The position numbers and the translations under genes were made by a program. A stretch of DNA of 64,000 nt from Convolutriloba macropyga. Lineage: Eukaryota. The notes below the pieces were generated by a model, which saw only the letters and a program-made list of their open reading frames with translations, was not told where the DNA came from and did not search any database. Numbering within the stretch: the first letter of the stretch is position 1; every line of letters starts with the position of its first letter. Where the stretch lies: the NCBI RefSeq assembly GCF_964194025.1, contig NC_134479.1, forward strand, positions 15,624,001 through 15,688,000. The letters run 5' to 3'. Shown in pieces: positions 2,231-63,493 of this stretch.

Positions 2231-3201
2231 TTTTACACGTTTTTTAGTATTGTCAAATAACAACCAAATTTTGTAAAGAATAACAAAATGTTTTCAAATA
2301 TTTATTGAAAATATCAAAAATTAGACAACTTAACATCATCATCATTATTTATTTAATTTCTATCTGACAATCCCATTATTTAGTGATCTTTCAAATATCA
2401 ATTTTGACATCTTCTTTTGTAAAGGCGAATCTTCTCAGGTGATCGATAGAGGTTTTTTGAGTACAACTTCATCGAACTTTTCACTATCGTTAGAAATAAG
2501 TCATAAAATGTATCAATTAAATCATAGTACCATAAAAATTACGTCCTACTATCTTCGCAATTACGGACAAATAGATGATTTCATAATTGCATGGGGGCCA
2601 CTGTCCTCTTTAGAACAAAATTAAGATCAATTACGTCTTAGGATTGGAACAATTACCGAATTACAGAAACCTAGATATTCTATGTGGTCATTGAACTCAT
2701 GTGAACAAAGTCTATACCATACTACTTACGATATGATGATTCATACTTTATCTAAGCATGCACAACTCACGTGATTGAGGTCTTACTCATAGTACCGTAA
2801 TAATAACGTCACTATTGCGTCATAATGATGTCATATTTATCATAGTGTACAAACAAAAGTACAACTCATTTTACTTCTTTTCCTTCTCTTCAACAACTTA
2901 ACTATAACTAGCTTTTGTTCTTTTCTTGAGACAATTTGAATCGCTTTTTGTTACCAGCCTAAGTTAACAACTATAAACTCTTCAGCGAAGATTCTTCATC
3001 CCTAGGACCTCTTCCTATTTCCCATTCCAAGTAAGTCTGTTCTGTTATAAAATATGAGAACAAACCATAAAAAGCGAATAAATAGCTATTATAATCATGG
3101 TACTCATTCGCAAATAGCATAGGAATGCTTCAGAGAGAAAGATTTAGCGATTATGGTTATAGGGGCAATTTTGCTTTAACTTTAGTTAAACAAAGGCTGG
3201 A

Positions 3202-11413: not shown

Positions 11414-12113
11414 AGAGTTTGTGTTAATACCTAAACAGATGTATACAAGAGAACAACCTCATATATCTCAATTACTCAGCAACAAAAAAATTCACAACCC
11501 AGCCAAGCAGATATCGCTTCTCCAAGGAAACAAGTCACCATCAGCTCCCCCTGCCTCGCAGCAGGATACAGAGCAACAAACTAACGCTTCAATGGATGAT
11601 GCAAGTACAATAAATGAGTCTATGGAAAAATCATTTACGACGGACAACACATCAACTATCAGACAAGGAGCGTTGAATGATATTAGAATCTTGAAGGGGA
11701 TAAAATTTGAAAGAGCGAGAAAAATACTGGAGATAATAGAAGAAACGGATTCTGTGTCCTTGGACTCATCAAAGAGATTGCTTATCAAAGGTTCAAATAC
11801 GGAAGTTCTTGCTGCTACATTTCTTTACAATCTACAGCAAACCACTTGTAAATTTTCTTTCGAACAATTCAATTTATTAGCGCTTCTCGATATTGGTCCG
11901 CATTTGACTTGTAACACATACGCCAAAAAGTTTCTAAATTTATTATCTGAAGAGAAGCTACATTTTTTGGAATATGAATCGGAAAAAGAAGATGCTTCAA
12001 AATCCCACAGAAAAAAAGCAAAAACTTCTGACAACGATGAGGGAAGCTTTGAAGAGGCAGAAGAAGAAATCAAACCAGCCAGCCCCTGGGAAAATTACTT
12101 CCTTTCAAGCTAA
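11403..12113 (+). CDS. Polinton hypothetical protein (236 aa, intact)
   Basis: Open ORF starting MHTEEFVLIP, packed between the small ORF and the integrase; acidic C-terminus. Confidence 0.7.
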   Translation: MHTEEFVLIPKQMYTREQPHISQLLSNKKIHNPAKQISLLQGNKSPSAPPASQQDTEQQTNASMDDASTINESMEKSFTTDNTSTIRQGALNDIRILKGIKFERARKILEIIEETDSVSLDSSKRLLIKGSNTEVLAATFLYNLQQTTCKFSFEQFNLLALLDIGPHLTCNTYAKKFLNLLSEEKLHFLEYESEKEDASKSHRKKAKTSDNDEGSFEEAEEEIKPASPWENYFLSS

Positions 12114-13014
12114 ACAGTTAGACAAATTGTACACGACAGGCAGTGCTGCATTTGGTAGTATTGCTAATTTAAAGAAGGCTAGTGGCTATACTAGAAGCAA
12201 AATTGTTCGCTATCTTCAGTCAAAAGCCCCCTACACGAAATACAGACAATTCAGGAAAAGCTTCCCCCGACTGAAAGCTGTTGCATACAGAATAAACGAA
12301 ATCTGGTCTGTCGATGTTGCGTTTATGGATAAAGTTGCCCAACACAACAATGGCGTAAAATATTTGTTAGTGGCTGTGGATGTTTTATCGCGTTACTTAC
12401 AAGTTCAACCAATGAAGGTCTTTTATGCAAAAGATGATGTTGAAGCCTTCAAAAAAATGATCAAGAAGAAACAGCCAGAGAAAGTATAGACAGACAAGGG
12501 ATCAGAATTTAAAGGAGATTTCAAAAAGTTTTGTGAGAAGAAAGGAATTCATTTATATACAACAGAAAACGAAACCAAGTCGGCATTTGCAGAGAGGAAC
12601 ATTCGATCGCTTAAAAACATCATTTACAAATATTTGGAGGAAAAGTGGACTTGGACGTATATTAAAGATTTGCCCCAGTTTGTAAATACTATAAACGGTC
12701 GTGTCAACCGGGTTACCCAATTAGCACCTAATAAAATTTTCAAAAGACACGAACCATTTTTAATATCACTTGCTTCAGACAACAACAAATACAAACCAAA
12801 ATACGAAGAAGGAGACCTTGTTAGGATTGCAACGCTTTTCAGAAAAGCTTATAAACAAAACTACACAGACGAAGTTTTCACAGTACTACGATTGGCTACA
12901 ACAAGTCCACCCACATACAATCTCTTTGACGCGAACAACGTTGAAATCCTAGGGAAATTTTTTGAACCGGAATTGGCAAAAAATGACGTGTTGAAAACTG
13001 AAGAGGAGCAATGA
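11974..13014 (+). pseudogene. Retroviral-like (rve) integrase
   Basis: WSVDVAFM..KYLLVAVDVLSRY..KV*TDKGSEF..KSAFAERNIRSLK gives the DDE core. Premature TAG at 12487-12489 (probably a former TGG). True start codon uncertain; no chromodomain seen. Confidence 0.95.
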
Positions 13015-17565: not shown

Positions 17566-20066
17566 GTACACTGAGAGCGGGCCAACACCATTCAGAGTAT
17601 CAAAAAAAACAAACTGCGACTTTAATTTGGATCTTCTACTGCTTAGTGATGGTCAAATGCATCACTATGTCTTGATCCGAAATTTGCGTAGTTTTATACA
17701 CAGAGTCCGCGAGCGAGTCCAAGGACTGAAAACTATATTTGTCGAAACTGCTTTCACGTTTCTTCTTCAAAGGAGCGTCATGATAAAAATCTTGGCTTTT
17801 GTCTAGAAAACAAACCAGCAGTCGTATCTGGCTGTGGGAACAACCCGCAAAATGCAGAAACAAGAATCATAGAGCTTCAAAAGCCATGCAGCTACGCAAT
17901 GCTTTTTGTTGGGCAGGACGAGGTTGAGCCCTTTCATTTTGAATGCGAAAGTGGTCCTGACATCATGTCCAAGTTTGTAGAATCTCTCGAGCAAATAGCG
18001 AAGAAAATATATCAAGCGAAACAACGAAACAGGTATTTTCATGGTGAGGCGCCATATTCAAAGGAAGATGCAGACGATTGTTGGATATGTGAGGAAACTC
18101 TTGAAAACACAATAGAAAACCCAACTCTTTGGGATCACTGTCATTTTACAGGCCAATTTTTAGGATGGGCACACAACAGTTGTAACATCAATAGAAAGTT
18201 CTTAAACTACACACCGGTATTTGCTCACAACCTTTCGAATTACGATCTTCACCACGTAATTCTTGCTCTTCAAGGGAGCAATATGTGCAATACTATCTCA
18301 ATTATACCCAGTACAGATAAAAAATTCATAGCTGTTGAAATTGGTGTTCTAATCAAGATGCGTCCTGACAAAAATGGAGTCAATAAACCAGTGTATGAGC
18401 ACATAAGATTATTGGATTCCTTCCGATTCATGCCATCATCACTAGACACTCTCACTAAAAATCTACCACCAACCGAGTTCACCTTGCTCGAAGACTACTT
18501 CAAAGACTGGCCAGAATCATCTCTAAACACGCTCAAGCAAAAAAGCTTCTTCCCTTACAACTACATCGACAGCTTTCCAAAACTCGGAGAATCTGAACTA
18601 CCATCGAGAGAAAAGTAGACTAACAGCCTTCAACAGTACCAAATTAGTGTAACTGAGGATGAATACAAGCACGCTCTTACTGTTTTTGAAGCATTCAAAT
18701 GTAAAACAATTGGAGAGTACTACAATCTCTATTTGAAAACGGATGTCTTCCTCCTTGCTGCTGTCGTATTTTGCTTTCGCTAGGTATGCTACCAAACTTA
18801 TGGACTTGACTGTTGTCAATACTACACAGCTTCAAATCTTTCGGGGGACGCTAAGCTCAAAATTTGTCAGGCACCCCTTGAGCTTCTCACAGACAGGGAA
18901 CAGTTGCACATGGTTGAGGGTTTGATCAGGGGCGGAGTGAGTTCTATCTACAACAGGGGACTCTCAGTTGCCAACAACAAATATCTCCCGAATTTCAATC
19001 CAAAAGAATCTTCAACATTTATAGTCATGATTGACGCGAACAATCTTATGGTGGCATAATGGAAAAGTTCACGTTGCCTCTCAATGATTTTGAGTTCACA
19101 AACCAACAATGGGACTCTGATCTTGAGCCACAATTCATTCAGAAAGTACTGGAGACTTCTGACGATAGTGATGTTGGATACATTTTGGAAGTGGACTTGT
19201 CATACCCAGACGCACTTCATGACCTTCACTCTGATTTCCCCCTAGCTCCAGTGAAGCAGCAGGTTGAACGTGCTGGTTAGGCGATTATCAAGAAGAACTC
19301 TTAACTGATATGCAGATGAATGCCCCACCCTCGAGTAATAAGCTCATTCAAACTCTATTCCCCAAGAAGAACTATATTCTACATTACCAGACACTAAAAT
19401 TATATGTTCAATTAGGTATGAAGGTTGAAAAACTGCATCGTGCGCTAACGTTTAACCAATCAAAGTGGTTGGCGCCATACGTTCAACTCAACACGCAAAA
19501 ACGAAAGGAGGCAAAAAACAATTTTGAGGAAAATTTTTATAAACTGATGGTCAACAGCACCTTCGGAAAAACATTTGAGGGGACGAGGAATCGAATCAAG
19601 GTGAAATTAGGCCGTAGTGAAGATGAGGCTCTCAAGTGGACTTGCACTCCACAGCTGAAATCTTTCAAAATAATTGGTGAAGATCTGGCAACAATTAGCC
19701 TTAACCAAACTAAAATTCTGTGGGATAAACCAACAATCGTTGGTGCATGTATCCTGGATCTCTCCAAGAAGTTCATGTTTGACTTTCACTATAATACTAT
19801 GAAAAAGCATTTCAACTGCAAACTGTTATACTCAGACACAGACCCATTCGTTTACGAGATCAGATCTAATGAATTTTACGCCGAACTGAGACGAAAAACT
19901 GCTCTTAAAGATCTCTTCGACTTCTCCAACTTCCCCAGCGACCATGAGCTCCATGACCGTTGTAATGCCCGGGTTACACTAAAGTTCAAGGATGAGATGG
20001 GTGGTAAACTGATCTCGGAGTTTGTGGGCCTCAAACCAAAGCTATACTCAATCAAACTTGCGGATG

Positions 20067-20205
20067 GTGAGTATACATTTAAATATTTCTTTGGGAACAA
20101 GAAAACATTATTTCCTATACATGTAAAAATGCAGGCAAGACTGGTGAAAGCGTAAAAGATATTAGAAAGGTGTAAGAGGCTCAAAAACAAAAGTAGAATT
20201 TTCAG
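20067..20205 (+). other. Spliceosomal intron 2 of pPolB (139 bp, phase 1)
   Basis: G|GTGAGT ... TTTTCAG|GA. Removal joins GLKPKLYSIKLADG to SPKQSAKGV in frame with the 20256-20957 ORF. Confidence 0.88.
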
Positions 20206-32801: not shown

Positions 32802-33477
32802 GTTGAAAAAGCTTCCGCACTATCAGATGGAAATGAAAAAGTAGCCAGTGTTCAATGCCAAACCAAAACTCCCCTTTGTCTCGAAAAAATAGGAACATGT
32901 TCATAGTTACCTCTGTAGATCATCTGTGTCGATTGTAGCAATCTGTCATAATCTACCCTACAACTGATCTAAGTGTCTAAGTGAACTCAGTGAGTGTTTG
33001 TGAATGGTGGTGCGTGTTAAAAGTTTGTGAACTGCTGCCGTCTAATTTTCGCAATAGGGTTTCTCTAAACCAGCAAGGTCCGCCTCTCAATCATTGGAGT
33101 TGCCAAAGTTAAGAAGGCAAGGAGTTTACTGGCGTCAAGCGAGTACAGTTCCTGCTACTCTTCAGACTGTTTATCTCAAGACTTGGTACTCCAGACAAGA
33201 TATTAAAATTAATTCCCAATATATATAGAATTTATCAACAAACAAAATATAAATGTGAGCATCATCTGAAGCTGTTGATGAAATGTCACGAGACTAAGAG
33301 GAGAGTTTTGAAATAAAAAACCAATAAAAACCGGTCGAAAGGGTGCAAATTGTAAAAAGACTAACCGAGTAATTCCTTTTTCTCAACTATGTTCCAAGCT
33401 CTGCACTCATTTTTACTCTCCACGTCGCTCTCCACTTTGCACTCCACTTTGTTCGGTGACGTGTGCCATAAAATTGT

Positions 33478-34516
33478 CACCAGTACTCTTTCTATGTACA
33501 AATTAAAACTCGCTTAGGTAACCACAAGGTAGCTTAGGATCCAAAACACAAGTTATTTTTCACCAATACTCTTGATATGTACAAGTTAAAACTCGCTTAG
33601 GTATCCAGCAGGTAGCTTAGGATCCAATACACAAGTTATTTTTCACCAATACTCTTGATATGTACAAGTTAAAACTCGCTTAGGTATCCAGCAGGTAGCT
33701 TAGGATCCAACACACAAGTTATTTTTCACCAATACTCTTGATATGTACAAGTTAAAACTCGCCTAGGTATCCAGCAGGTAGCTTAGGATCCAATACATAA
33801 GTTATTTTTCACCAATACTCTTAATATGTACAAGTTAAGACTCCTTAGGTAACCCCAAGGTAGCTTAGGATTCAATACACAAGTTATTTTTCATCAATAC
33901 TCTTGATATGTACAAGTAAAACCCCTTAGGTATCCAGCAGGTAGCTTAGGAACCAATACACAAGTTATTTTTCACCAATATTCTTGTTATGTACAAGTTA
34001 AAACTCGCTTAGGTATCCAGCAGGTAGCTTAGGATCCAATACACAAGTTATTTTTCACCAATATTCTTGATATGTACAAGTTAAAACTCCTTAGGTAACC
34101 CCAAGGTAGCTTAGGATCCAATACACAATTTATTTTTCACCAATACTCTTCATATGTACAAGTTAAAACTGGCTTAGTTAACCCCTAGGTAGCTTAGGAT
34201 CCAATACACAAGATATTTTTCACCAATACTCTTGATATGTACAAGTTAAAACTCGCTTGGGTAACCCCAAGGTAGCTTAGGATCCAATACACAAATTATT
34301 TTTCACCAATACTCTTCATATGTACAAGTTAAAACTGGCTTAGTTAACCCCTAGGTAGCTTAGGATCCAATACACAAATTATTTTTCACAAATACTCTTG
34401 ATATGTACAAGTTGAAACTCGCTTAGGTAACCCCAAGGTAGCTTAGGATAAAATACACAAGTTATTTTTCATCAAAACTCTTGATATGTACAAGTTAAAA
34501 CTTGCTTATCTAACCA
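33478..34516. repeat. Second internal tandem array, unit ~83 bp, ~12.5 copies
   Basis: Consensus CACCAATACTCTTGATATGTACAAGTTAAAACTCGCTTAGGTATCCAGCAGGTAGCTTAGGATCCAATACACAAGTTATTTTT; anchors at 33561 and 33644. Confidence 0.95.
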
Positions 34517-54191: not shown

Positions 54192-56081
54192 AGCTATACG
54201 AACGGGGAATAACTTCGTCACCAAAAACTTCTCAAATCACCCGGTAAGCCATAAGTCAGACCGTACCAATCTATAATATTTTTTACTAAGGTTGAGGCGT
54301 TATTCGCGCAATGATGGTGTTCTGTTTAAGTTGAGCTGTGTGAGCTGAGATTTTATTGAAAAAGGAGCAGAATAAAACTGACTAAGTCGAATTTTAAATT
54401 GTGGCTATAATTCTGCTCATTCCAAGAATTAGCTACAACAAGGCAAGAATTGCTCAAGTTTCAAAATTCTAGCATATATAGTTCATTTCAATCAACCTAT
54501 TATCGATTTTGTGGAAATGGGAAGGGGGGGGGGGTAAAAAAAGCACCAGGGCTGAAAACTTAGCTGGAAACCTAGGCCAAATACTTTTCAGCTCATAAGT
54601 GAAAATAGAGCAAAAAAGCTCTTCGAACTTTTCGGTGTATTTCTACAACAGTTTTTCCTTCTTTCCCTTGCCTTGTGGTAGTAGATTGGAATTTTTTTAT
54701 AGTGCCGGCAATTAGTGCGTTGATGACGATTAATTAATCTTTTACAAAGCTTTGATCGCTTGTTCAAATTATTACTTTTTATAAACTTAGTCAATTATAA
54801 CCGCGCTTTCTGTGCTGCAAATTGAACTGTTTATTCAAAATACGCTCTTAATCAGTTCAGTTTGTTTTCATTACCTGAACTACTATAAGTTTAAACAAAA
54901 TTCGAAGCTTTGAAAAATCTACGAACTATCGTGCTTGAGTCATAATAAGAGTATATTATAAAAACCATTCATTAAACATGAATACCTTTTATAGCCTGCG
55001 TGATAAAACTCAACTGCGATAATGAAACGACGCTAGATTATAAAAGTTTACAAGAACAACGCAAAACCATTTTTTATATGTAATATGCTAAAGATAATAT
55101 TACAAAACGTATGTGGTCATTTTTCCATCTAGCAGGAAATGAACGCTTTAAATCATGAATTATTAATGACGTGAGGCGTAAATTTCCAACGATCAATATT
55201 GCGGTTCAAAATGAAAATTGCAGTTCAAATCTTTGAAAGGTTGTGTTGGTTATTACAACAGCCCAACCTGGTCCTGTTTTAGAAAAACGATTAAATAAAG
55301 TATTCTAAAATATTCAAATTATTAAAATTATTAAAATATTAAAAACAAAGCGTGAGTAGGAATGCGACAGCCATTTAAAATACGCGTAATAACCAGCGTA
55401 GAGTAACTGGCTGTAATAATAAGAATAGGGAAAGAAACAAGGAAAAAAGAGGGATGAAAAATTACGCTTCAAATTTATTGTAACGGAATGCAGTTATTTT
55501 CAATGTGTAGCTATTTCTGCTTTACCTATCTATCTATTATATGCAAGTGTGTATGTATGTATGTGCGTGTGGTTTACGTGTATACAAATGGTAAAAAGCA
55601 CAGGCAAATTTTGGTGCGATGAATAAAAAAGACAAGGACGAGTTACTTCTTTTTCCAACACTAAGGCTTCCGTTATTCAATTTAAGTAATGCGAAAAGAG
55701 TAGAGGGGGGGGGGGGTTCAATTTTTTTTTGATATGGTACAAAAGTGAGCTGAAGAGGTGGATCGTGTTTATGGAAAGTTTTCTTCTCATAGGGAGAGAA
55801 TCACAGGCGGTAATAAATGAGTGACTATTTTCTTCATAATTATCGGAAAAAATTGGCACAAAATGATTGCACTCTTTGAATAAGGGCTTAGATACGAACC
55901 AGACCGGTCTAACCGGCGATGGTGTCGAATTTGGTAATTTTCTGAAAAAAATCCGGTTCTTATTGTTACTCAAGCCTACGAAGAATTAGGCGACAAATCT
56001 CTGTTTCTTTTACGTACAGTCAGAGGATTGCGCAAAACTTATCAAGACTCTCCAGTTTTCAGCAGTGACTCAACTGTTAAA

Positions 56082-59000
56082 ATGTTAAGGTGTGGGTTCC
56101 GAGCAACAAGACAGGTGAGGAAGAATTTGGCGGGTGGAGTGGGGTGGAATTGAAGTGCAAAGTGGACTCGGATACTGAGATGGAATGTGGAATCTGAAGA
56201 CATTGCTATGTGAGTTGCGGAGGTGCAGACAGGTAGAGTGAGAGAGGTCTGATGGAAAATTTGTTCATGGTCGACTCCTCAGGTTAGTTTCAACACCCCT
56301 CCCCCACTGCCCTTAGCCAATTCGGACTGATGTCTGCGTCTACCAGAACAACAACGCAAAGGTAAGCGTACTACCCCCCCCCCCCCCCCCTAACTGTTGA
56401 CTGTTTGTTTTGAGTCACGCGGCTGAGGGCGGTGTTTCGTCAACTACAAAAGGTAACTTATATGTGCATGAAATTATATCATACTATGATCAGACACTCG
56501 ACCTTAAATACATGCAAATACATTACAAATTAAATCGCTATACTGGTGCTGTATTTTATATCGTTCTACTCATTTTCCTTGTGCTGTAATTGGTTATACT
56601 AATGTGCTATTATGACCGTGAAAAGGGGATACACGTGAAGTCTGTTCATGGCTTCGCAAATGCTATTATTTTCGCGCTAATTTTCAAGAAGGAAACTCGA
56701 ATGCCTTCCAAAAGGGTTATAGTCTTCTCAGAGCTAGTTCCGGATCCCGGAACATAATCCCCAGCCGGTCAGCTGTTCACGCCGTGAACTTATAGCTATT
56801 CAATTAGATTTGATGCTCTATTGATTTCATTTCGTTGTACTATTTAAAGGCCGCGAAACGGGAAAGAGTAAAACGGTTTTCTATTGCCGACATGAAGGCT
56901 GTAATTGGTAACAAAATGCCTTCACCTTGAGATTATAGGCAATCAAATACCCGTTTCGGCCACTTGTTCATACCGTGAACATACTAGTGTGTTTAATTTA
57001 TCATATATGTTGTTATGTGTTTACATATTCCCACCAAATTTATAATAATCATAGAATTTTAAAACAAACCACAACCATCCGCCATCACGCAAGGAAAACT
57101 ATGGTCGAGTTGCCAGCTCCCATACGACAAAGGTAAGGACCCCCCCCCCCCCCCCTCACTTGACCCCAGGTCTAAACAAATTCCTGGAGTCTCAAAATGA
57201 CCGGACCGTGCTCGGCCATGAGTTTTTTAAAGTGTGATTGTACTGTACGTCAAAACACAAAATCTACCATGACAGTTTCATTGATCCAGTCAAGCTATAT
57301 TCAATACTATAGCCGAATTGATTCTTTTTCTTCTTTGTATGATAATCGCGATATTTAAACAAACATAAATTGCAATGGCTAGTTTTAGAAATTTTGTTTA
57401 GATTTCTACCCTTCAGCATCGACCATTATCAAATGTAAAAGTAAAGCAGTAGTTCGTGTCAAAATGATTCCGAAATTAAATCGTTTGTTCACTGGTTGGG
57501 GGAAGGGGTATTTGGATTCTGTGCTGGGTGGGTTGTTGGGTTATATAATGTTTATGGCTCTCACCAGTTTGTGAACTTAACCCACATAGCTGGTGAGGGC
57601 GTTTTCTTTTAACTGACCAACTGGTTTTTACTGTACATCGCCTACGCCCTCAATTTGCAGATGTTTGACAGAGCATTTCACCAAAACAGGTTAGTTTCTG
57701 CCCCCCCCCCCCTCCGTCTCCTAACCCACTAACTTTGGGATTGGTTCTGGTAATGATACCAGATTGTCTACACAACGGTAAGTTCAATAATCGCCCACAA
57801 TTTTAAAATATTGAGGTGATGGTACAGTTGTACATTTTGAGACAGTTTTGGGTGGAGTGAAGTCCAGCACCCAGTTTTGGGTGGAGTTGAGTGAAGTCTC
57901 CAGCAACCTTGGCACCCCTCTCCAGCACCCGAAACCCGAAAAAAAAATAAGTTGGCGCTGAAGTACATACACCGGCCACCAAGGTAAAGTCTTTACCCCC
58001 CCCCCCCCCGGAATTGTTTGCAGATGTTAACTCACAGTGAATGGCGGTGTTTCCCAACAAAAAAGGTAAGAATGTGACCAAAACAAACTGGTCAGGTGCT
58101 CGACCGAGAAACCCAAGGTACGTGAACCCATGTGAGGTGAGTGCAATATACATTTAGACATTAGAAAGCCTTTTGGGGGATACACGTGACTTCATTGAGG
58201 ATATAAGCTATGACTTGTCTGGTTCAGGTACGATCCGAAACCCCTCTCCTCAGTTGTTAAACCGTAAAAATAAACCCATTTGCGTAGATTAAAAAATTGC
58301 AGAATTCTGCTTTTGTTTCTTGTTTTCCCAGATATGCAGCTGGCGTGACCAATCAAAGCCACCTTTGCTCGAAATTGACGAGCAGAACTCTGGTTGAGCT
58401 TGCAACCCCCTGACGGACACAAGGTAAGACCCTCCTCCCCCCCCCCCCCCCCTCCATAACTCAACTTCAACTGAAGTGCTATACCTCGAAATAATTGACT
58501 CCTCGCGACCATGAATTTCATAAGTGTCTGGTAATATGCAACAACCTAGTTAGTGTGTTATCCGCGATTTCAAATTTACTTGGACATTACTAGTTATAGT
58601 TCTTGATTACCACAATATGAAAATGTGAGCCCGATTCATTTCAGTAACCGAAATTGAAATCCATCGAAAAATCAGTTTTGATAGTTATGGATACTGGAAG
58701 CTGTGATAAACATTGTTTAGATCATATTAGTGTATACACATTGTATTAGCCAGTCGAACATATTATAATAAACAGAGACAATTATTAATTTAGTCGATCT
58801 AAGAAATCTCCATAGACTTTTGAGAACGAAAATATTTAGGGTGGAAAAGTAGTTGCCATCGAGTACGAGGTTTTGAAATAAAGCGACTCGACTTTTGTCA
58901 ACTTTTGATGACATAAGAAGGGTTGCTGCACACAGAATTGCTGGATATGGCTCTAACTAGCTTGCGTACTTACCCATATAACCGAGTAGGGCCTTCTTTA

Positions 59001-59535
59001 ACCAACTCTTTATTTCTCCACCCCATTATTAACATATGCCTTGCAGTGTGATACTAACAGCAAAAGGTGAGAATTCTTGAACGTGTATAAAAGTATATAT
59101 AATATTGTATAGACTATTGAAAATATATTTTGCACGTCGTATAATTTTTTCCAAGCATGTCGAGTTTAGCATGTCTTTGTCCAGTTTAGCCTAATTGAAC
59201 GCATAAAAGTAAAGTGTTTCAAATTTCTCAACCAATCACATTCGTTGAAATTTCTACATTTTGGTACGTCTATTTGTTAAGACGTCACCCATGTCGAGAT
59301 CAAAAGAGTAGTAGACAATAGCCATGCAGATTTTTCGCAAGCAGTGTCATCATCATCATTGGAAGCCATGAGGTTCCGGAGCAACCCGACACAAAAAGGC
59401 AAAGGAGACCCCCCTGAGACCCGGGATAGAGGAAGAACAAAACTGACTTCAGCACCTATTGACTGAAATGGCTTCGGCAACACGTGACTTCAGTAAATGA
59501 AATAACTTTAGGCAAAGGTAAAAAGGTAAGATCAG
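56082..59535 (+). other. Cluster of ~14 short (A)TG-start units, 28-33 nt, each ending at a 5' splice-site motif, several followed by poly-C
   Basis: Donor GT at 56115, 56283, 56362, 56453, 57133, 57690, 57778, 57984, 58066, 58118, 58228, 58424, 59067 and 59526, plus GC at 59399. Function unknown. Confidence 0.55.
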
Positions 59536-60888
59536 ACTTTCGCACAGTGGGGGGGGGGGGGGTCTCTATAAGTATTTCGAGTTCAGATGGTATGAAATTG
59601 AAAATTGATATTGAATGAAAGTTCCCCTAGTTCTACGACCAGACTTTCGCGCTTATAATTTTGATCATAGACAAATGCAATCCCCCATTCTGCGAAAACG
59701 AGACCATATTTCACTATTTGATTAACTGAGCAGCTTAGATTGGCACGATTATCAGCCGCATTAAGAATTATTTGAAATATGGCTCAAGGCCAGCTCATTA
59801 ATTTGTAAAGGACCAAAAATTCGAAGTACAAATCATGACATCTGATATGAAAAATGAGACGTGAGGTATAAATATATGCAAAATATTTCGGAAACGACAA
59901 TTTCTCAGAAAACAGGTAGAATAATTTCTTGGTTGAAAGTTTTCAAAAAAACTTTCTCTCAAAAAGAAAACTTTGAGCATGCATGGTAAACAAAAACTAA
60001 GAAATTCATGAACGATTCTTGATTGTCATTTTTCGAAAGTTCTGTGTACAGTCAAGTGAGAAAGGACTGCACTATGGCTAATACGATCAATGGAAACACA
60101 CCAAAACGTTGTTTTTATTGTTCCAACCCTTCATGTAGAGCGTTTCAAGAACTTATTCGAGCCTCGATTTTGAGTCTTTCGTCCATTAACAGGATGGGCG
60201 GAAAAAAACTTGGTGACATCATTTACAAGATTCAGATTGTTAAAACATCAAAATTAACATTGTTGATATACTACACGAGTTTTTTTGTTGAAGCACGAGC
60301 TCGTCAAATTAGCTTAGCTTTTGTTGAACAGCAGTATCTATATAGAACAGCCAAAAGTTAAACATGAAACAAAATGCTCCACCAAAGTAAACCAGATATA
60401 AAAATTCGTATTCATCTGTAAGATTAAAAAGATTAAAACTTTTGTGCAAAACTCTTTAATTAACGCGAAATCGTGTTCGTTCAAAGGTGGTAATATTTAC
60501 AGAAAAAGTACTTTGTTTGTGAAAATTTCTGCCTGCGGAAAAATAGATCGATGAAAAAAAACTAAGCATATATTTCTGATTTAACTCGGTTGAGATTTGT
60601 TTTAGAAAGAAACATCGAGTAAATTAATCAGGTTAGTATTTTATTCTCATGCAAAAATTCCTTCATTGAAGTGCCTTTCTCAGTTCATTTTCAGAGATGT
60701 TAAAGAATATCCAAAAATTTACAAATTTTCGGTAAAAATTAACAGGGAAATTTTAGATCAGCAAAAATGTAGCCAAGCAATATGTTAAGCACCTCAAAAG
60801 TTGGCAACGCTCACATAAACACTGCAACCCTAATTTTTTGGAACTACTATTTTGCTGACGGCTTCGGGTGCTATGTAATAGTCCTTCA

Positions 60889-63493
60889 TTGTTCCGACCC
60901 CTCTTGAGGGGGGGGGGGGACTATATACTCAAATGGTTTTTTTGTTCAGATAATTTCGGGCGAACGATATATTCATCGTAGAGAGTTGAGACTAGTATCA
61001 TTAGAAAGCTTGTCCAGCGCAGAAAATGGAATTCAATTTTTTTATTTTCGTTTTTAACAGGGAGTTATCGAGGTTTAAACTTTTGAGAAAATAGAGTGAG
61101 TTCCGTTGATTTTACTCACATTTTTCGGAATTTTCGACTAAAATTTTGCCAATTTTGCTAAAGTTTGTCAATAACGTTAATAAATTTTTTCAAGAATGTA
61201 TTGTTGATTTTCTTTTTAAAGACAAAAAATAATGTATACTTTTTTAATTTAAATTTACTGTCAAAAATTCTGGCTAATTATTTCAAATTCAGAATTTTTC
61301 ATCAAAAACAGCACCAAATAAGTTTCTTTAGTTTACTTTGAGTACATTTGCAGGAAGTGCACACCCAAACACCAGTAGCCCAATCTTTGTAGGGTCAAAA
61401 AGGAGCTATTTGTACTTCAACTTCCGTTGCGTGTACTCTGTAATTAAAGCTTTGCCGTTTTTGACGACTTTAATCGTTGAATAACAAAAACGCAGCATTT
61501 AATTTTGATTTTTTTTACTAACAAAATATCTACATCTATGACATTCGAAGAATTAAGTGTTCTCAATGGACAAAAAGCATTAGCAGGAATAGTTTTGGAC
61601 CAACCTTGGACTGTCACAATCCAAAAACAATTCAGATTGTAATCAGTCGGTCTTTTAAAAAATTTGATCGTCTTATGTTAAACAAGAGAACATTTCAACT
61701 CAAAGCTGAATAGTGACAAGTCCAAATGGCTTCATAATTAGCTCCCAAATAAATTATCTAGTTTATTACTTGAAAGCTTACGGTCGTTTTGACTTTTAAA
61801 AATATTTGATTTTTAAATAAAAAATGGATTATAGAAATTTGCCTCCATTTCTCTTTTATTTTGGTCAACTTGTAGCTTAGTGTAAGCACTTAAAAAAATG
61901 TTTCTTCAACTGAATTCAAAATAGCTAATTTTTTCGGTTTCACGCATTAAGTTATTGTTTTTTGGCTTTGATAGTACTATATTTCACATTTTTTTAAAAA
62001 AATTTTACTTATTTTCCCATTTTTCATGTTTTCTAGATTTGTCACATTATCACGTAATTGACAGTTCGTAAATCACATTATTGGCGTTCACAATAAGACA
62101 AAACTGATTATATGTAAACCCGTGAAGAAAGAGATTATGGTTCTATACGGCTTCGACACTACTTTCTCGAAGAATTTAATTGAAATTTTCAATTTTGTCT
62201 CTAGCTGTCGTTTTTACTTTTTCTTTTCAGTTCTATGAAATTTCGCGACCAATGACCCGTTTTCATTGGTTTTTCATGGAAGAAAAGATGAGCCAATTTT
62301 CTGATATTAGAAGATAGCTGATAGCCTTCATGACTTTGAAAACAATTGTTTTCCAGAATAAAAAACACTAACTTCACATCTTTGTTTTTTTTTTGCTTTC
62401 TAGTCTTATTTTTTACAGGCCGAAAATGACAATATTTTTGCCACGGGAAGTTGTTAAAATGGAGTGATGTTTCAAAATCTAATGTTTTGAAAGAGTTCGT
62501 TTTTAATTAACTTGCTTCGACTCGGGTTTTTCACAAAAAAAGTACATAAATTTTTAATTATTGTCATATTTGACGTTTTTCTGAAGACGCAAGACATTCT
62601 GGACTGGATAATTCAGTTCTAAAAGGCCTCCTCTAGAAAAAATAGCGAACCTTTTCTTTTCTAATTATTTCACTTTGTAATTAATGGCTTTCATGTCTTT
62701 GGAAATGATTTTTTTTTTTGAAAAAAAACACGTATTACTTAACTTTGCCTTTTTATTTTTTGTCTACTTGTTAGCCAGTTTCAATAATGAGAGATTGCAA
62801 AATATTTTTTTGGTGTTCGAAGAAGGTGCAATAGAACATATTTTGACGGCCAAAGTATGGCTGTAAGGCTTCGAATATGTTTTCTGTCAAGTTTTAATTG
62901 ATTTTTTGTTTGTTTTCTATTTGTTTTGCTTTCTCTTATTTCTTATTCCTCTTTTATAGAAGCATTGGTAACTGTATACCAAAGAATTTTATAGTTTAAT
63001 TCTAATGGTTTTCCTTACTTTGAAATTAGTTGTTCTTTTTTAAAAAATAAGCGAAATTTTCAAATTTTCTGTTTTTGTTTTACTTTGTCTAATTGTTACC
63101 AAGCCTTATAATGGAAGCGTCCCAAATCTTTTTTTGGTGAATTACCAGTTGTTTTGTTTAATTTCAGTTTTATCTGACGCTATTTTGACTTTGTTATTAA
63201 ATTTGTTTTTAAAACTTCGTTTTTTAAACCGGACAAAGGGTCTGTTGAACTTAAAGTTTGTTGTTGTTGTTTGATATTGCTGATCGTCTTGACTTGTTTT
63301 CTTAATTTTTTCAAATCTCATCAATCTAATGCATCATTTTTTACACCACTAAGTTATTTGCCTTGGAGGTTATCTTTTCGTTCGCACAACAATTTTTAAA
63401 GTTCTTGAATTTTCTACCTGTTCATTTGATAGACGATTATGCCAAAAATGTAGATTAGAGTTGGAACCTTATGTGCGATCGCACATTACCTAG
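60889..63493 (+). mobile_element. HINE/DINE-1-like non-autonomous Helentron, copy 2
   Basis: Same 5' GTTCCGACCCCTCTTGAGGGG start; 3' GAGTTGGAAC plus perfect palindrome ATGTGCGATCGCACAT (63471-63486). Diverged but colinear with copy 1, with an extra ~230 bp near 61390-61630. Confidence 0.75.

What the first reader, a model, noticed from the sequence alone, without database searches (positions are those of the whole stretch)
56082..59535. Dense cluster of ~30-nt (A)TG-initiated units each closed by a splice donor: possible small-RNA minigenes or a micro-exon bank
Seen: about 15 same-strand donor motifs (mostly AAG|GTAAG-like) in 3.5 kb. An ATG lies 29-33 nt upstream in eight cases (56082/33 nt, 56252/31, 56330/32, 57101/32, 57661/29, 59036/31, 59368/31 with a GC donor, 59497/29). 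A TG lies at 28-33 nt in most others (56424, 57953, 58038, 58089, 58196, 58395). Unit sequences all differ, tend to be G/T-rich 5' and A/C-rich 3', and have mixed phases, which argues against alternative coding first exons. One strong donor (58137) does not fit. Established: piRNAs begin with U and are ~26-32 nt, and nematode 21U-RNAs come from individual motif-defined minigenes. Inference, speculative: these may be individually specified 1U ~30-nt RNAs whose 3' end is set by a U1/5' splice-site motif; micro-exons or variant spliced leaders are the alternatives.
Basis: partly seen in the sequence, partly recalled or inferred. Interest (0 to 1): 0.78.

Follow-up and report, generated by a model that had tools for sequence, protein, structure and literature searches.

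The report
Array of short donor-ended leader units
A 3.5-kb single-copy stretch of the acoel worm Convolutriloba macropyga carries 16 same-strand splice-donor signals, each about 30 bases after a TG or ATG. It is most likely a bank of short non-coding leader exons made by local duplication, not a set of small-RNA genes, but no RNA data could be reached to prove either reading.

Summary
The 56-60 kb stretch holds 14 strong + strand donors against about 1.1 expected (P about 1e-11). A TG lies 28-33 nt upstream of 15 of 16 donors, and an ATG lies 29-33 nt upstream of 8 of 16. The 3' halves of the units are A/C-rich. All five poly-C tracts sit 8-13 nt after a donor.

The units are not coding: their phases are mixed and a second form of the sequence, probably the other haplotype, has indels inside units. 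They are not ordinary internal micro-exons either, because upstream acceptors are not enriched. They do not resemble SL RNA: they are unstructured, unrelated to the animal's own 31-nt leader, and have no copies elsewhere. They also lack the marks of 21U-type minigenes: there is no fixed upstream motif, and the family has only three loci.

Two old partial paralogs (C15 and C12) keep the donors while the unit sequences drift, so the donors look selected. My best reading, at confidence 0.4, is an array of alternative short non-coding 5' leader exons of one Pol II unit, formed by tandem duplication. The five C tracts all complement a single G14 tract just after the last donor, which may act as a selector/docking device. 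No RNA run was available, so usage is untested.

The parts
56082..56114 (+). unit 1: ATG, 33 nt, donor GTGAGG at 56115
56252..56282 (+). unit 2: ATG, 31 nt, donor GTTAGT at 56283, followed by a degenerate C-rich tract
   Evidence: paralog on C12 keeps a donor here
56330..56361 (+). unit 3: ATG, 32 nt, donor GTAAGC at 56362
   Evidence: in the C12 paralog the donor and the 30-nt length are kept but the unit sequence is not
56374..56390 (+). poly-C tract C17, 12 nt after the donor of unit 3
56424..56452 (+). unit 4: TG, 29 nt, GGCGGTG core, donor GTAACT at 56453 (GTAAGG in the second sequence form)
57101..57132 (+). unit 5: ATG, 32 nt, donor GTAAGG at 57133; the second sequence form carries a 2-nt insertion inside the unit
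57140..57155 (+). poly-C tract C16, 7 nt after the donor of unit 5
57661..57689 (+). unit 6: ATG directly after TTTGCAG, 29 nt, donor GTTAGT at 57690
57701..57712 (+). poly-C tract C12, 11 nt after the donor of unit 6
57748..57777 (+). unit 7: TG, 30 nt, donor GTAAGT at 57778; kept in the C15 paralog
57953..57983 (+). unit 8: TG, 31 nt, donor GTAAAG at 57984; kept in the C15 paralog
57996..58009 (+). poly-C tract C14, 12 nt after the donor of unit 8 (C10 in the C15 paralog)
58024..58065 (+). unit 9: ATG after TTTGCAG at 58024, TG at 58038 (28 nt), GGCGGTG core, donor GTAAGA at 58066; kept in the C15 paralog
58089..58117 (+). unit 10: TG, 29 nt, donor GTACGT at 58118
58118..58136 (+). extra strong donor GTGAGT at 58137, without the 30-nt TG spacing
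58196..58227 (+). unit 11: TG, 32 nt, donor GTACGA at 58228; E-box motif 42 nt upstream of the donor
58395..58423 (+). unit 12: TG, 29 nt (a second TG at 33 nt), donor GTAAGA at 58424; homologous unit with donor in the C12 paralog
58437..58452 (+). poly-C tract C16, 13 nt after the donor of unit 12
59036..59066 (+). unit 13: ATG, 31 nt, donor GTGAGA at 59067
59368..59398 (+). unit 14: ATG, 31 nt, GC donor GCAAAG at 59399
59497..59525 (+). unit 15: ATG, 29 nt, donor GTAAGA at 59526 (a second donor, GTAAAA, at 59518)
59549..59562 (+). G14 tract 23 nt after the last donor, complementary to all five C tracts; flanked by an 11-nt direct repeat (59533 and 59641)
56623..56643 (+). repeated promoter-like motif GGGGATACACGTGA (E-box); a second copy at 58174-58198 and a related CACGTGACTTCA at 59481-59496
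   Evidence: read directly
56741..56757 (.). palindrome with two inverted CCGGAA (ETS-like) sites, conserved in the C12 paralog
59167..59289 (.). dispersed short repeat, probably a MITE, inserted between units; the only multi-copy part of the array

Best explanation
The stretch is the 5' region of one Pol II transcription unit on the + strand. It holds a bank of about 15 short (about 30 nt) non-coding leader exons. Each ends in a strong 5' splice site that is helped by an A/C-rich segment just upstream and, in five units, by a C tract just downstream. The bank grew by local tandem duplication of an 'exon 1 + donor + start of intron 1' module, and the copies then drifted apart. What selection keeps is the donor and the roughly 30-nt spacing from a TG (a pyrimidine-purine start site, or an old ATG). 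It does not keep the unit sequence. In use, one unit at a time would supply the 5' leader and splice to a downstream acceptor that has not been identified. Shown here: the donor enrichment, the spacing, the composition, the lack of coding constraint, the lack of paired acceptors, and the retention of donors in old paralogs. Inferred: transcription, start sites at the TG, use as alternative first exons, and the common acceptor.
For: There are 14 strong same-strand donors against 1.1 expected. TG lies 28-33 nt upstream of 15 of 16 donors and ATG upstream of 8 of 16. The A/C-rich 3' halves (73%) fit a donor-proximal enhancer or an unstructured leader. Upstream acceptors are no better than at random positions, so most units look like first exons rather than internal ones. 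The units are non-coding: phases are mixed, joined units run into stops, and the second sequence form has 2-nt and 5-nt insertions inside units, yet its 5-nt insertion recreates a consensus GTAAGG donor. The array is single copy apart from one MITE. Two partial paralogs exist. The C15 copy keeps 3 of 3 donors at 82% identity, with the units at 77-80% and the post-donor segments at 90-96%. The C12 copy at 10.345 Mb keeps 4 donors at about 68% identity although unit 3 is unalignable and only its length is kept. Units share descent: the GGCGGTG core occurs in exactly four units genome-wide. Promoter-like motifs (E-box, paired ETS-like sites, CCAAT, TEAD-like GGAATG repeats) lie between units, and some are conserved in the paralog. 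GC content is raised (0.415 against 0.34).
Against: There is no RNA evidence at all: the only runs found are DNA. No downstream constant exon or coding gene was found within about 24 kb. The sequence after the array is AT-rich, carries indel differences between the two sequence forms, and runs into an LTR retrotransposon and a convergent gene. No TATA or other core motif sits at a fixed distance, and CpG observed/expected is not raised. Two units (57661, 58024) do sit directly behind good TTTGCAG acceptors, so some may be internal exons. An ATG in half of the leaders is unexpected for 5' UTR exons. Donor retention in the paralogs is partly an alignment-anchoring effect.
Confidence: 0.4

Rival explanations
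1. The array is a functionless relic. The 5' end (exon 1, donor, start of intron 1) of a gene was duplicated in tandem many times, perhaps along with the poly-C end of a MITE, and the copies are decaying. On this view the donors and the spacing are inherited, not selected.
For: Units share descent. Poly-C/poly-G tracts are the ends of a MITE family that is common in this genome. No downstream exon was found. The two sequence forms differ as much inside the units as outside them. The paralog loci are only fragments.
Against: Unit sequences have drifted to roughly 45-50% identity (compared by eye for one pair, units 3 and 5) and are unalignable in the C12 paralog. Yet 13 of 16 donors keep G at +5, 14 keep A at +4, and 15 of 16 keep A at -2 and all 16 G at -1. 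The 5-nt insertion in the second sequence form recreates a perfect donor. Five C tracts remain pure at 12-17 nt, whereas the older paralog copies are degenerate.
Confidence: 0.2
2. The units are consecutive micro-exons of one long non-coding RNA, separated by mini-introns of 35-75 nt in which the C tract serves as the polypyrimidine tract, plus a few longer introns.
For: Each C tract is followed within 14-50 nt by an AG, often after a CTAAC- or TCAC-like branch motif. Units at 57661, 58024 and 59047 sit behind good acceptors, and the 58024 acceptor is conserved in the C15 paralog. Joined exons give no long reading frame, which fits a non-coding RNA.
Against: Taken over all 16 units, acceptor strength is no better than at random positions (P = 0.19 and 0.71). 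The AG proposed for unit 4 is GGG in the C12 paralog. Some implied introns would be only 30-37 nt. No snoRNA was found in the longer gaps, so this is not a classic host gene.
Confidence: 0.15
3. The donors act as U1 snRNP binding sites rather than as used splice sites. On this view the array recruits U1 to boost transcription or to suppress premature polyadenylation across an AT-rich region.
For: Only the donor consensus and its flanking enhancer-like composition are conserved. Six AATAAA or ATTAAA signals lie on the + strand inside the array.
Against: This does not explain the 30-nt TG spacing or the C tracts. No direct test was possible.
Confidence: 0.1
4. The units are variant spliced-leader-like donor exons. 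They would be small capped RNAs whose roughly 30-nt 5' exon is trans-spliced to other RNAs, like the polymorphic leaders of Trichinella spiralis.
For: Unit length (28-33 nt) matches this animal's real leader of 31 nt. Each unit ends in a donor, and most lack a paired acceptor. A TGACTTCA motif occurs three times in the array, against about 0.08 expected from base composition (my estimate), and also lies 55 nt upstream of the real SL RNA gene. T. spiralis has 15 dissimilar leaders (PMC7668243).
Against: The real SL RNA folds with z = -4.7, with its donor in stem-loop I. Eleven units give z between -1.2 and +2.2. Donors lie only 19-91 nt apart in places, too close for separate SL RNAs of about 100 nt. 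The canonical leader has more than 3,300 genomic matches, a sample of which are leader-headed copies rather than genes. No unit between 56000 and 58480 has any copy outside the two paralog loci. The TGACTTCA motif is absent from most U2 promoters, so it is not shown to be an snRNA promoter element.
Confidence: 0.07
5. One reading: each unit is a minigene for a small RNA of about 30 nt that starts with U and has its 3' end set by the donor motif.
For: The TG-to-donor spacing of 28-33 nt is real. Unit sequences are free to vary, as piRNA sequences are.
Against: No upstream motif sits at a fixed distance. Only about 16 units exist here, plus two small paralog loci in a 1.18-Gb genome. To my knowledge, no pathway is known that ends a small RNA at a 5' splice site. 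The A/C-rich segment and the C tract fit splicing-enhancer grammar better.
Confidence: 0.04

Closest known systems
Arrays of alternative variable first exons, each with its own promoter and donor, joined to shared downstream exons (clustered protocadherins, UGT1A; from my own knowledge)
   Same: There are many same-strand donors without paired acceptors. The array arose by tandem duplication. Promoter-like motifs lie between the units.
   Different: The known variable exons are long and coding. Here the units are about 30 nt and non-coding, and the shared exon is not identified.
Docking-site/selector-sequence competing RNA pairings in mutually exclusive splicing (Dscam1 exon 6; evolution by tandem duplication, PMC6071210)
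   Same: Several same-strand elements (five C tracts, each next to a splice site) are all complementary to one element (the G14 tract) at the end of the array. Tandem duplication would create exactly this layout.
   Different: The pairing here is homopolymeric, so covariation cannot test it. The selectors mark donors of leader units, not cassette exons. The G14 tract may be a later insertion. Nothing has been shown at the RNA level.
SL RNA genes: the canonical acoel leader (PMC9911081) and the polymorphic leaders of Trichinella spiralis (PMC7668243)
   Same: A 5' exon of about 31 nt is followed directly by a consensus donor, and the sequence varies between units.
   Different: There is no stable SL RNA fold, no clear Sm site, and no tandem identical copies. 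No copies of any tested unit (units 1-12, 56000-58480) lie outside the two paralog loci. The units are packed too densely.
Nematode 21U-RNA minigenes (from my own knowledge)
   Same: Many short units with individual sequences lie on one strand, each with a T near its 5' end.
   Different: There is no conserved upstream motif, the number of units is tiny, the units are about 30 nt rather than 21, and each ends in a donor.
snoRNA host genes with many short non-coding exons (GAS5, Drosophila Uhg; from my own knowledge)
   Same: The exons are short, poorly conserved and non-coding, with strong splice sites.
   Different: No snoRNA was detected in the gaps by Rfam or by a C/D-box scan. Paired acceptors are not evident.

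Membership tests
SL RNA gene | short 5' exon followed directly by a GT donor | tested here: met
   16 units of 28-33 nt end in a donor. The real SL exon is 31 nt.
SL RNA gene | stable fold with the donor in stem-loop I and a single-stranded Sm site before a further stem-loop | tested here: not met
   The real SL RNA gives z = -4.69. The 11 units give z from -1.19 to +2.23.
SL RNA gene | leader found joined to many unrelated RNAs (proxy here: leader-headed copies in the genome) | tested here: not met
   The canonical leader matches at more than 3,300 places, and all ten copies I read lack the donor and are joined to unrelated sequence. Units between 56000 and 58480 match only the two paralog loci. 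This is a proxy; RNA was not available.
SL RNA gene | many near-identical gene copies in tandem arrays | tested here: not met
   The real gene has about 1,260 copies, mostly on C9. The units here all differ and occur once.
21U-RNA / piRNA minigenes | conserved upstream motif at a fixed distance from the RNA start | tested here: not met
   No column from -100 to -34 reaches 0.75 bits.
21U-RNA / piRNA minigenes | hundreds to thousands of units in large clusters | tested here: not met
   Three loci exist genome-wide.
21U-RNA / piRNA minigenes | small RNAs with a 5' U mapping to the units | not testable with these tools
   No RNA run was found.
internal cassette micro-exons | each exon preceded by a polypyrimidine tract and AG | tested here: not met
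   Best acceptor strength equals that at random positions (P = 0.19 and 0.71). About three units are exceptions.
internal cassette micro-exons | reading frame kept across the exons | tested here: not met
   The phases are 0, 1 and 2. Joined exons hit stops. The second sequence form has 2-nt and 5-nt indels inside units.
alternative first-exon array | several same-strand donors lacking their own acceptors | tested here: met
alternative first-exon array | a promoter or start site for each unit | tested here: inconclusive
   The TG (pyrimidine-purine) 30 nt before 15 of 16 donors fits a start site, and E-box, ETS-like and CCAAT motifs are present. There is no fixed core motif and no 5'-end data.
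alternative first-exon array | a shared downstream acceptor and exon | tested here: inconclusive
   Only weak candidates follow the G14 tract. No coding exon was found within about 24 kb.
docking/selector competing RNA structures | several selectors complementary to one docking site, each next to a competing splice site | tested here: met
   Five C tracts, 8-13 nt after donors, each give 15-19 nt of pairing to the G14 tract at 59549. This is sequence-level evidence only.
docking/selector competing RNA structures | pairing conserved or covarying in relatives | tested here: inconclusive
   Homopolymers cannot covary. The two paralog loci have C-rich tracts but no G tract on the unit strand within 20 kb. 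No related species was available.
snoRNA host gene | snoRNAs inside the introns | tested here: not met
   Rfam at E up to 10 gave nothing credible. The C/D-box scan found 0 candidates. H/ACA snoRNAs were not scanned separately.

The most novel reading that the evidence does not exclude
The five poly-C tracts just after donors are selector sequences that compete for one poly-G docking tract (59549) placed before the shared acceptor. Only one leader unit at a time would then be brought to the acceptor. This would be a homopolymer-based splice-choice device, built from the poly-C/poly-G ends of a MITE family and multiplied by tandem duplication, in an animal where introns with paired ends have been noted elsewhere in this scan.
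Probability: 0.1. Interest if true: 0.7.

Novelty: new variant of a known kind. Interest (0 to 1): 0.45.

Why it matters
If the units are used, this would be an unusually dense bank of tiny alternative leader exons in an early-branching bilaterian that also uses spliced-leader trans-splicing. It would show what a minimal first exon needs: about 30 nt, an A/C-rich 3' end and a strong donor. The C-tract/G-tract layout would also allow a simple test of whether transposon-derived complementary ends can steer splice-site choice. If the units are not used, the array is an example of how tandem duplication and transposon debris can imitate a gene-like system.

Tried and rejected
- **RNA evidence.** The run search returned only four runs from one study, and all four proved to be DNA contigs of even depth showing two sequence forms. 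They gave no joints, starts or ends inside the array.
- **Exact-protein look-up.** A look-up of a 116-aa ORF from the array found nothing.
- **Rfam.** A search at E up to 10 gave no credible RNA family.
- **C/D snoRNA scan.** It found 0 candidates.
- **Genome-wide 'donor + N3-14 + C11' pattern.** It is not enriched over the reversed control (40 against 21 matches, many of them overlapping). The other sites I read include ordinary introns of coding genes with a poly-C/poly-G MITE beside the donor, and several non-genic sites. This is therefore not a genome-wide system.
- **snRNA-type promoter idea.** TGACTTCAG lies at -55 in the SL RNA gene and in two U2 copies, but it is absent from the other U2 promoters.
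- **CpG-island test.** Negative.
- **Minus-strand reading.** Reading CTTAC as a branch point does not fit: G at +5 and the AAG before GT fit a donor, and only 3 of 8 units would have an AG on the minus strand.
- **Nuclear-receptor half-site reading of AAGGTAA.** Rejected for the same reason.
- **Paralogous coding exons.** A search downstream of the three loci found only transposons.
- **Pfam.** Neighbouring ORFs gave no hits.
Full report
**Where this is.** The window is C12:15,624,001-15,688,000 of a 1,175,981,408-base assembly. That size matches the published Convolutriloba macropyga genome of 1,175.98 Mb (PMC13650328). Earlier notes of this scan name the same species.

**Checking the observation.**
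- I read 55.5-60.2 kb directly.
- A donor weight matrix finds 14 + strand donors in 56-60 kb. Other 2-kb bins of either strand average 0.55, which gives a Poisson P of 1.5e-11.
- With two weaker GT donors and one GC donor, there are 16 units.
P is about 6e-4 even when the best 5-nt window is chosen post hoc.
- TG lies 28-33 nt before 15 of 16 donors. P is about 0.003 after scanning all 16 dinucleotides and all windows.
- TG is therefore the primary signal. Among the 15 units that have it, A precedes the TG in nine, and a purine follows it in eleven.
- The last 14 nt of the units are 73% A/C (P < 2e-4). The first 15 nt are 59% G/T (P = 0.017).
- All five poly-C tracts of 12-17 nt in the array start 8-13 nt after a donor. 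By chance this has a probability of about 6e-8, my estimate from the fraction of positions that lie so close to a donor.

**What the units are not.**
- *Not coding.* The ATG-to-donor phases are 0, 1 and 2 in roughly equal numbers. Conceptually joined units run into stops.
- *Indels inside units.* A second form of the sequence in the DNA runs, probably the other haplotype, carries a 2-nt insertion inside unit 5 and a 5-nt insertion in unit 4. That 5-nt insertion turns the GTAACT donor into a consensus GTAAGG.
- *Not ordinary internal micro-exons.* The best upstream acceptor of each unit is no stronger than at random positions. Three units (57661, 58024, 59047) do sit behind good acceptors.
- *Not a dispersed repeat.* Only 59167-59289, a short repeat that is probably a MITE, is multi-copy.
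- *Not a known RNA family*, and there are no C/D snoRNA candidates in the gaps.

**Relation to the animal's spliced leader.**
- The leader published for the acoel S. roscoffensis (PMC9911081) occurs unchanged here at more than 3,300 places. The ten copies I read all lack the donor and are joined to unrelated sequence, as retro-copied trans-spliced RNAs would be.
- About 1,260 true SL RNA genes, mostly in arrays on C9, have a 31-nt exon followed by GTAAGT.
- That RNA folds strongly (z = -4.7), with the donor in stem-loop I. Eleven units from the array give z between -1.2 and +2.2.
- The units share no sequence with the leader and lie as little as 19-91 nt apart.
- None of the units between 56000 and 58480 has any other genomic copy.
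- The shared length of about 31 nt is the only resemblance. Polymorphic leaders do exist elsewhere (T. spiralis, PMC7668243), so I keep this as a low-probability rival.

**Paralogs.** Two partial copies of the array exist.
- *C15:43,226,583-43,226,899.* It is 82% identical by column over the aligned block and keeps three of three donors. The unit sequences are 77-80% identical, but the segments after the donors are 90-96% identical.
- *C12:10,345,133-10,345,491, minus strand.* It is about 68% identical and keeps four donors. In the copy of unit 3 the sequence is unalignable and the ATG is lost, yet the distance from a conserved upstream block to the donor is 30 nt against 32 nt.
- The GGCGGTG core of units 4 and 9 occurs with a nearby donor at only these four places in the genome.
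- The family is therefore small and old. What persists is the donor and the spacing, not the unit sequence.
- No paralogous coding exon follows any of the three loci.

**Poly-C and poly-G tracts.**
- Genome-wide, a donor followed by C11 is not enriched over a reversed control.
- The other sites I read include ordinary introns of coding genes with a roughly 120-150-bp MITE with poly-C and poly-G ends beside the donor, and several non-genic sites.
- In the array the C tracts have no local G partner. All five are, however, complementary over 15-19 nt to one G14 tract at 59549, 23 nt after the last donor.
- That G14 tract lies between two copies of an 11-nt direct repeat, so it may have arrived by insertion.
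- Five selectors and one docking site is the layout of competing RNA pairings, which tandem duplication is known to create (PMC6071210). I give this reading 10%.

**Best explanation.**
- I read the array as a bank of short non-coding leader exons, mostly first exons, of one + strand Pol II unit.
- It would have formed by tandem duplication of an 'exon 1 + donor + intron start' module.
- Selection would act on the donors, on their A/C-rich upstream and C-rich downstream context, and on the roughly 30-nt length.
- Promoter-like motifs lie between units and are partly conserved in the C12 paralog: a repeated GGGGATACACGTGA E-box, paired ETS-like sites, CCAAT boxes and GGAATG repeats.
- GC content is raised, but CpG is not.

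**Weak points.** There is no RNA evidence and no identified downstream exon. No fixed core promoter motif was found. An ATG in half of the leaders is unexpected. I therefore give this reading 0.4.

**Novelty and interest.** Arrays of alternative first exons are known. An array of about 30-nt non-coding units with homopolymer tags would be a new variant. The pattern is statistically solid but confined to one locus plus two fragments, and its use is untested, so I set interest at 0.45.

Noticed in passing
window:10180-20957: A run of + strand ORFs whose translations I recognise as polinton/Maverick-type genes (protein-primed DNA polymerase B pieces at 17899-20155, integrase-like at 11974-12489). 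No domain search was run on them. The element lies 35 kb from the array.
   Followed up: no
window:21076-32813 and 33477-34516: Two large satellites with nearly the same period, 84 bp (140 copies) and 83 bp (12.6 copies). The larger 84-bp array has strong C-over-G skew.
   Followed up: no
L037:1380-1600 (C9:23.14 Mb); window 58190, 59444, 59488: The true SL RNA gene has ATGACTTCAGTGGG about 55 nt upstream of its start. Two U2 copies (L061, L062) have GGACTTCAGA at -65. TGACTTCA occurs three times on the + strand of the array, against about 0.08 expected from base composition (my estimate). It may be a shared promoter element, but it is absent from the other U2 promoters.
   Followed up: partly
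L043, L046, L047, L053, L054, L056 (around position 3000 in each): A MITE family of about 120-150 bp has a poly-C run at one end and a poly-G run at the other. In L054 the inverted ends extend beyond the homopolymers. Copies sit 0-19 nt after real splice donors, for example in a DYRK-like kinase gene (L043).
   Followed up: partly
window:57024-57479: Two sequence forms appear in all four DNA runs and differ by 31 substitutions and 13 gap positions in 455 nt. If they are haplotypes, this is very high local heterozygosity.
   Followed up: no
window:60716-61100: An extremely abundant repeat begins next to a G12 tract at 60908. Summed contig depth is about 9e5, against about 30 nearby.
   Followed up: no
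window:53200-53506 and L031 (C12:10.346 Mb): The same roughly 154-bp dispersed repeat lies 2.6 kb upstream of the array and 0.7-1 kb upstream of its C12 paralog. It also occurs beside an SL copy in L034, so it is probably a common MITE and the placement a coincidence.
   Followed up: no
L030:361-480 (C15:43.2264 Mb), minus strand: In the C15 paralog the three-unit block starts about 110 nt from the ATG of a divergent minus-strand ORF, so that copy sits at what looks like a bidirectional promoter.
   Followed up: no
window:56120-56200: Tandem GGAATG (TEAD-type) motifs lie just after the first donor, and the C12 paralog has the same motif cluster.
   Followed up: no
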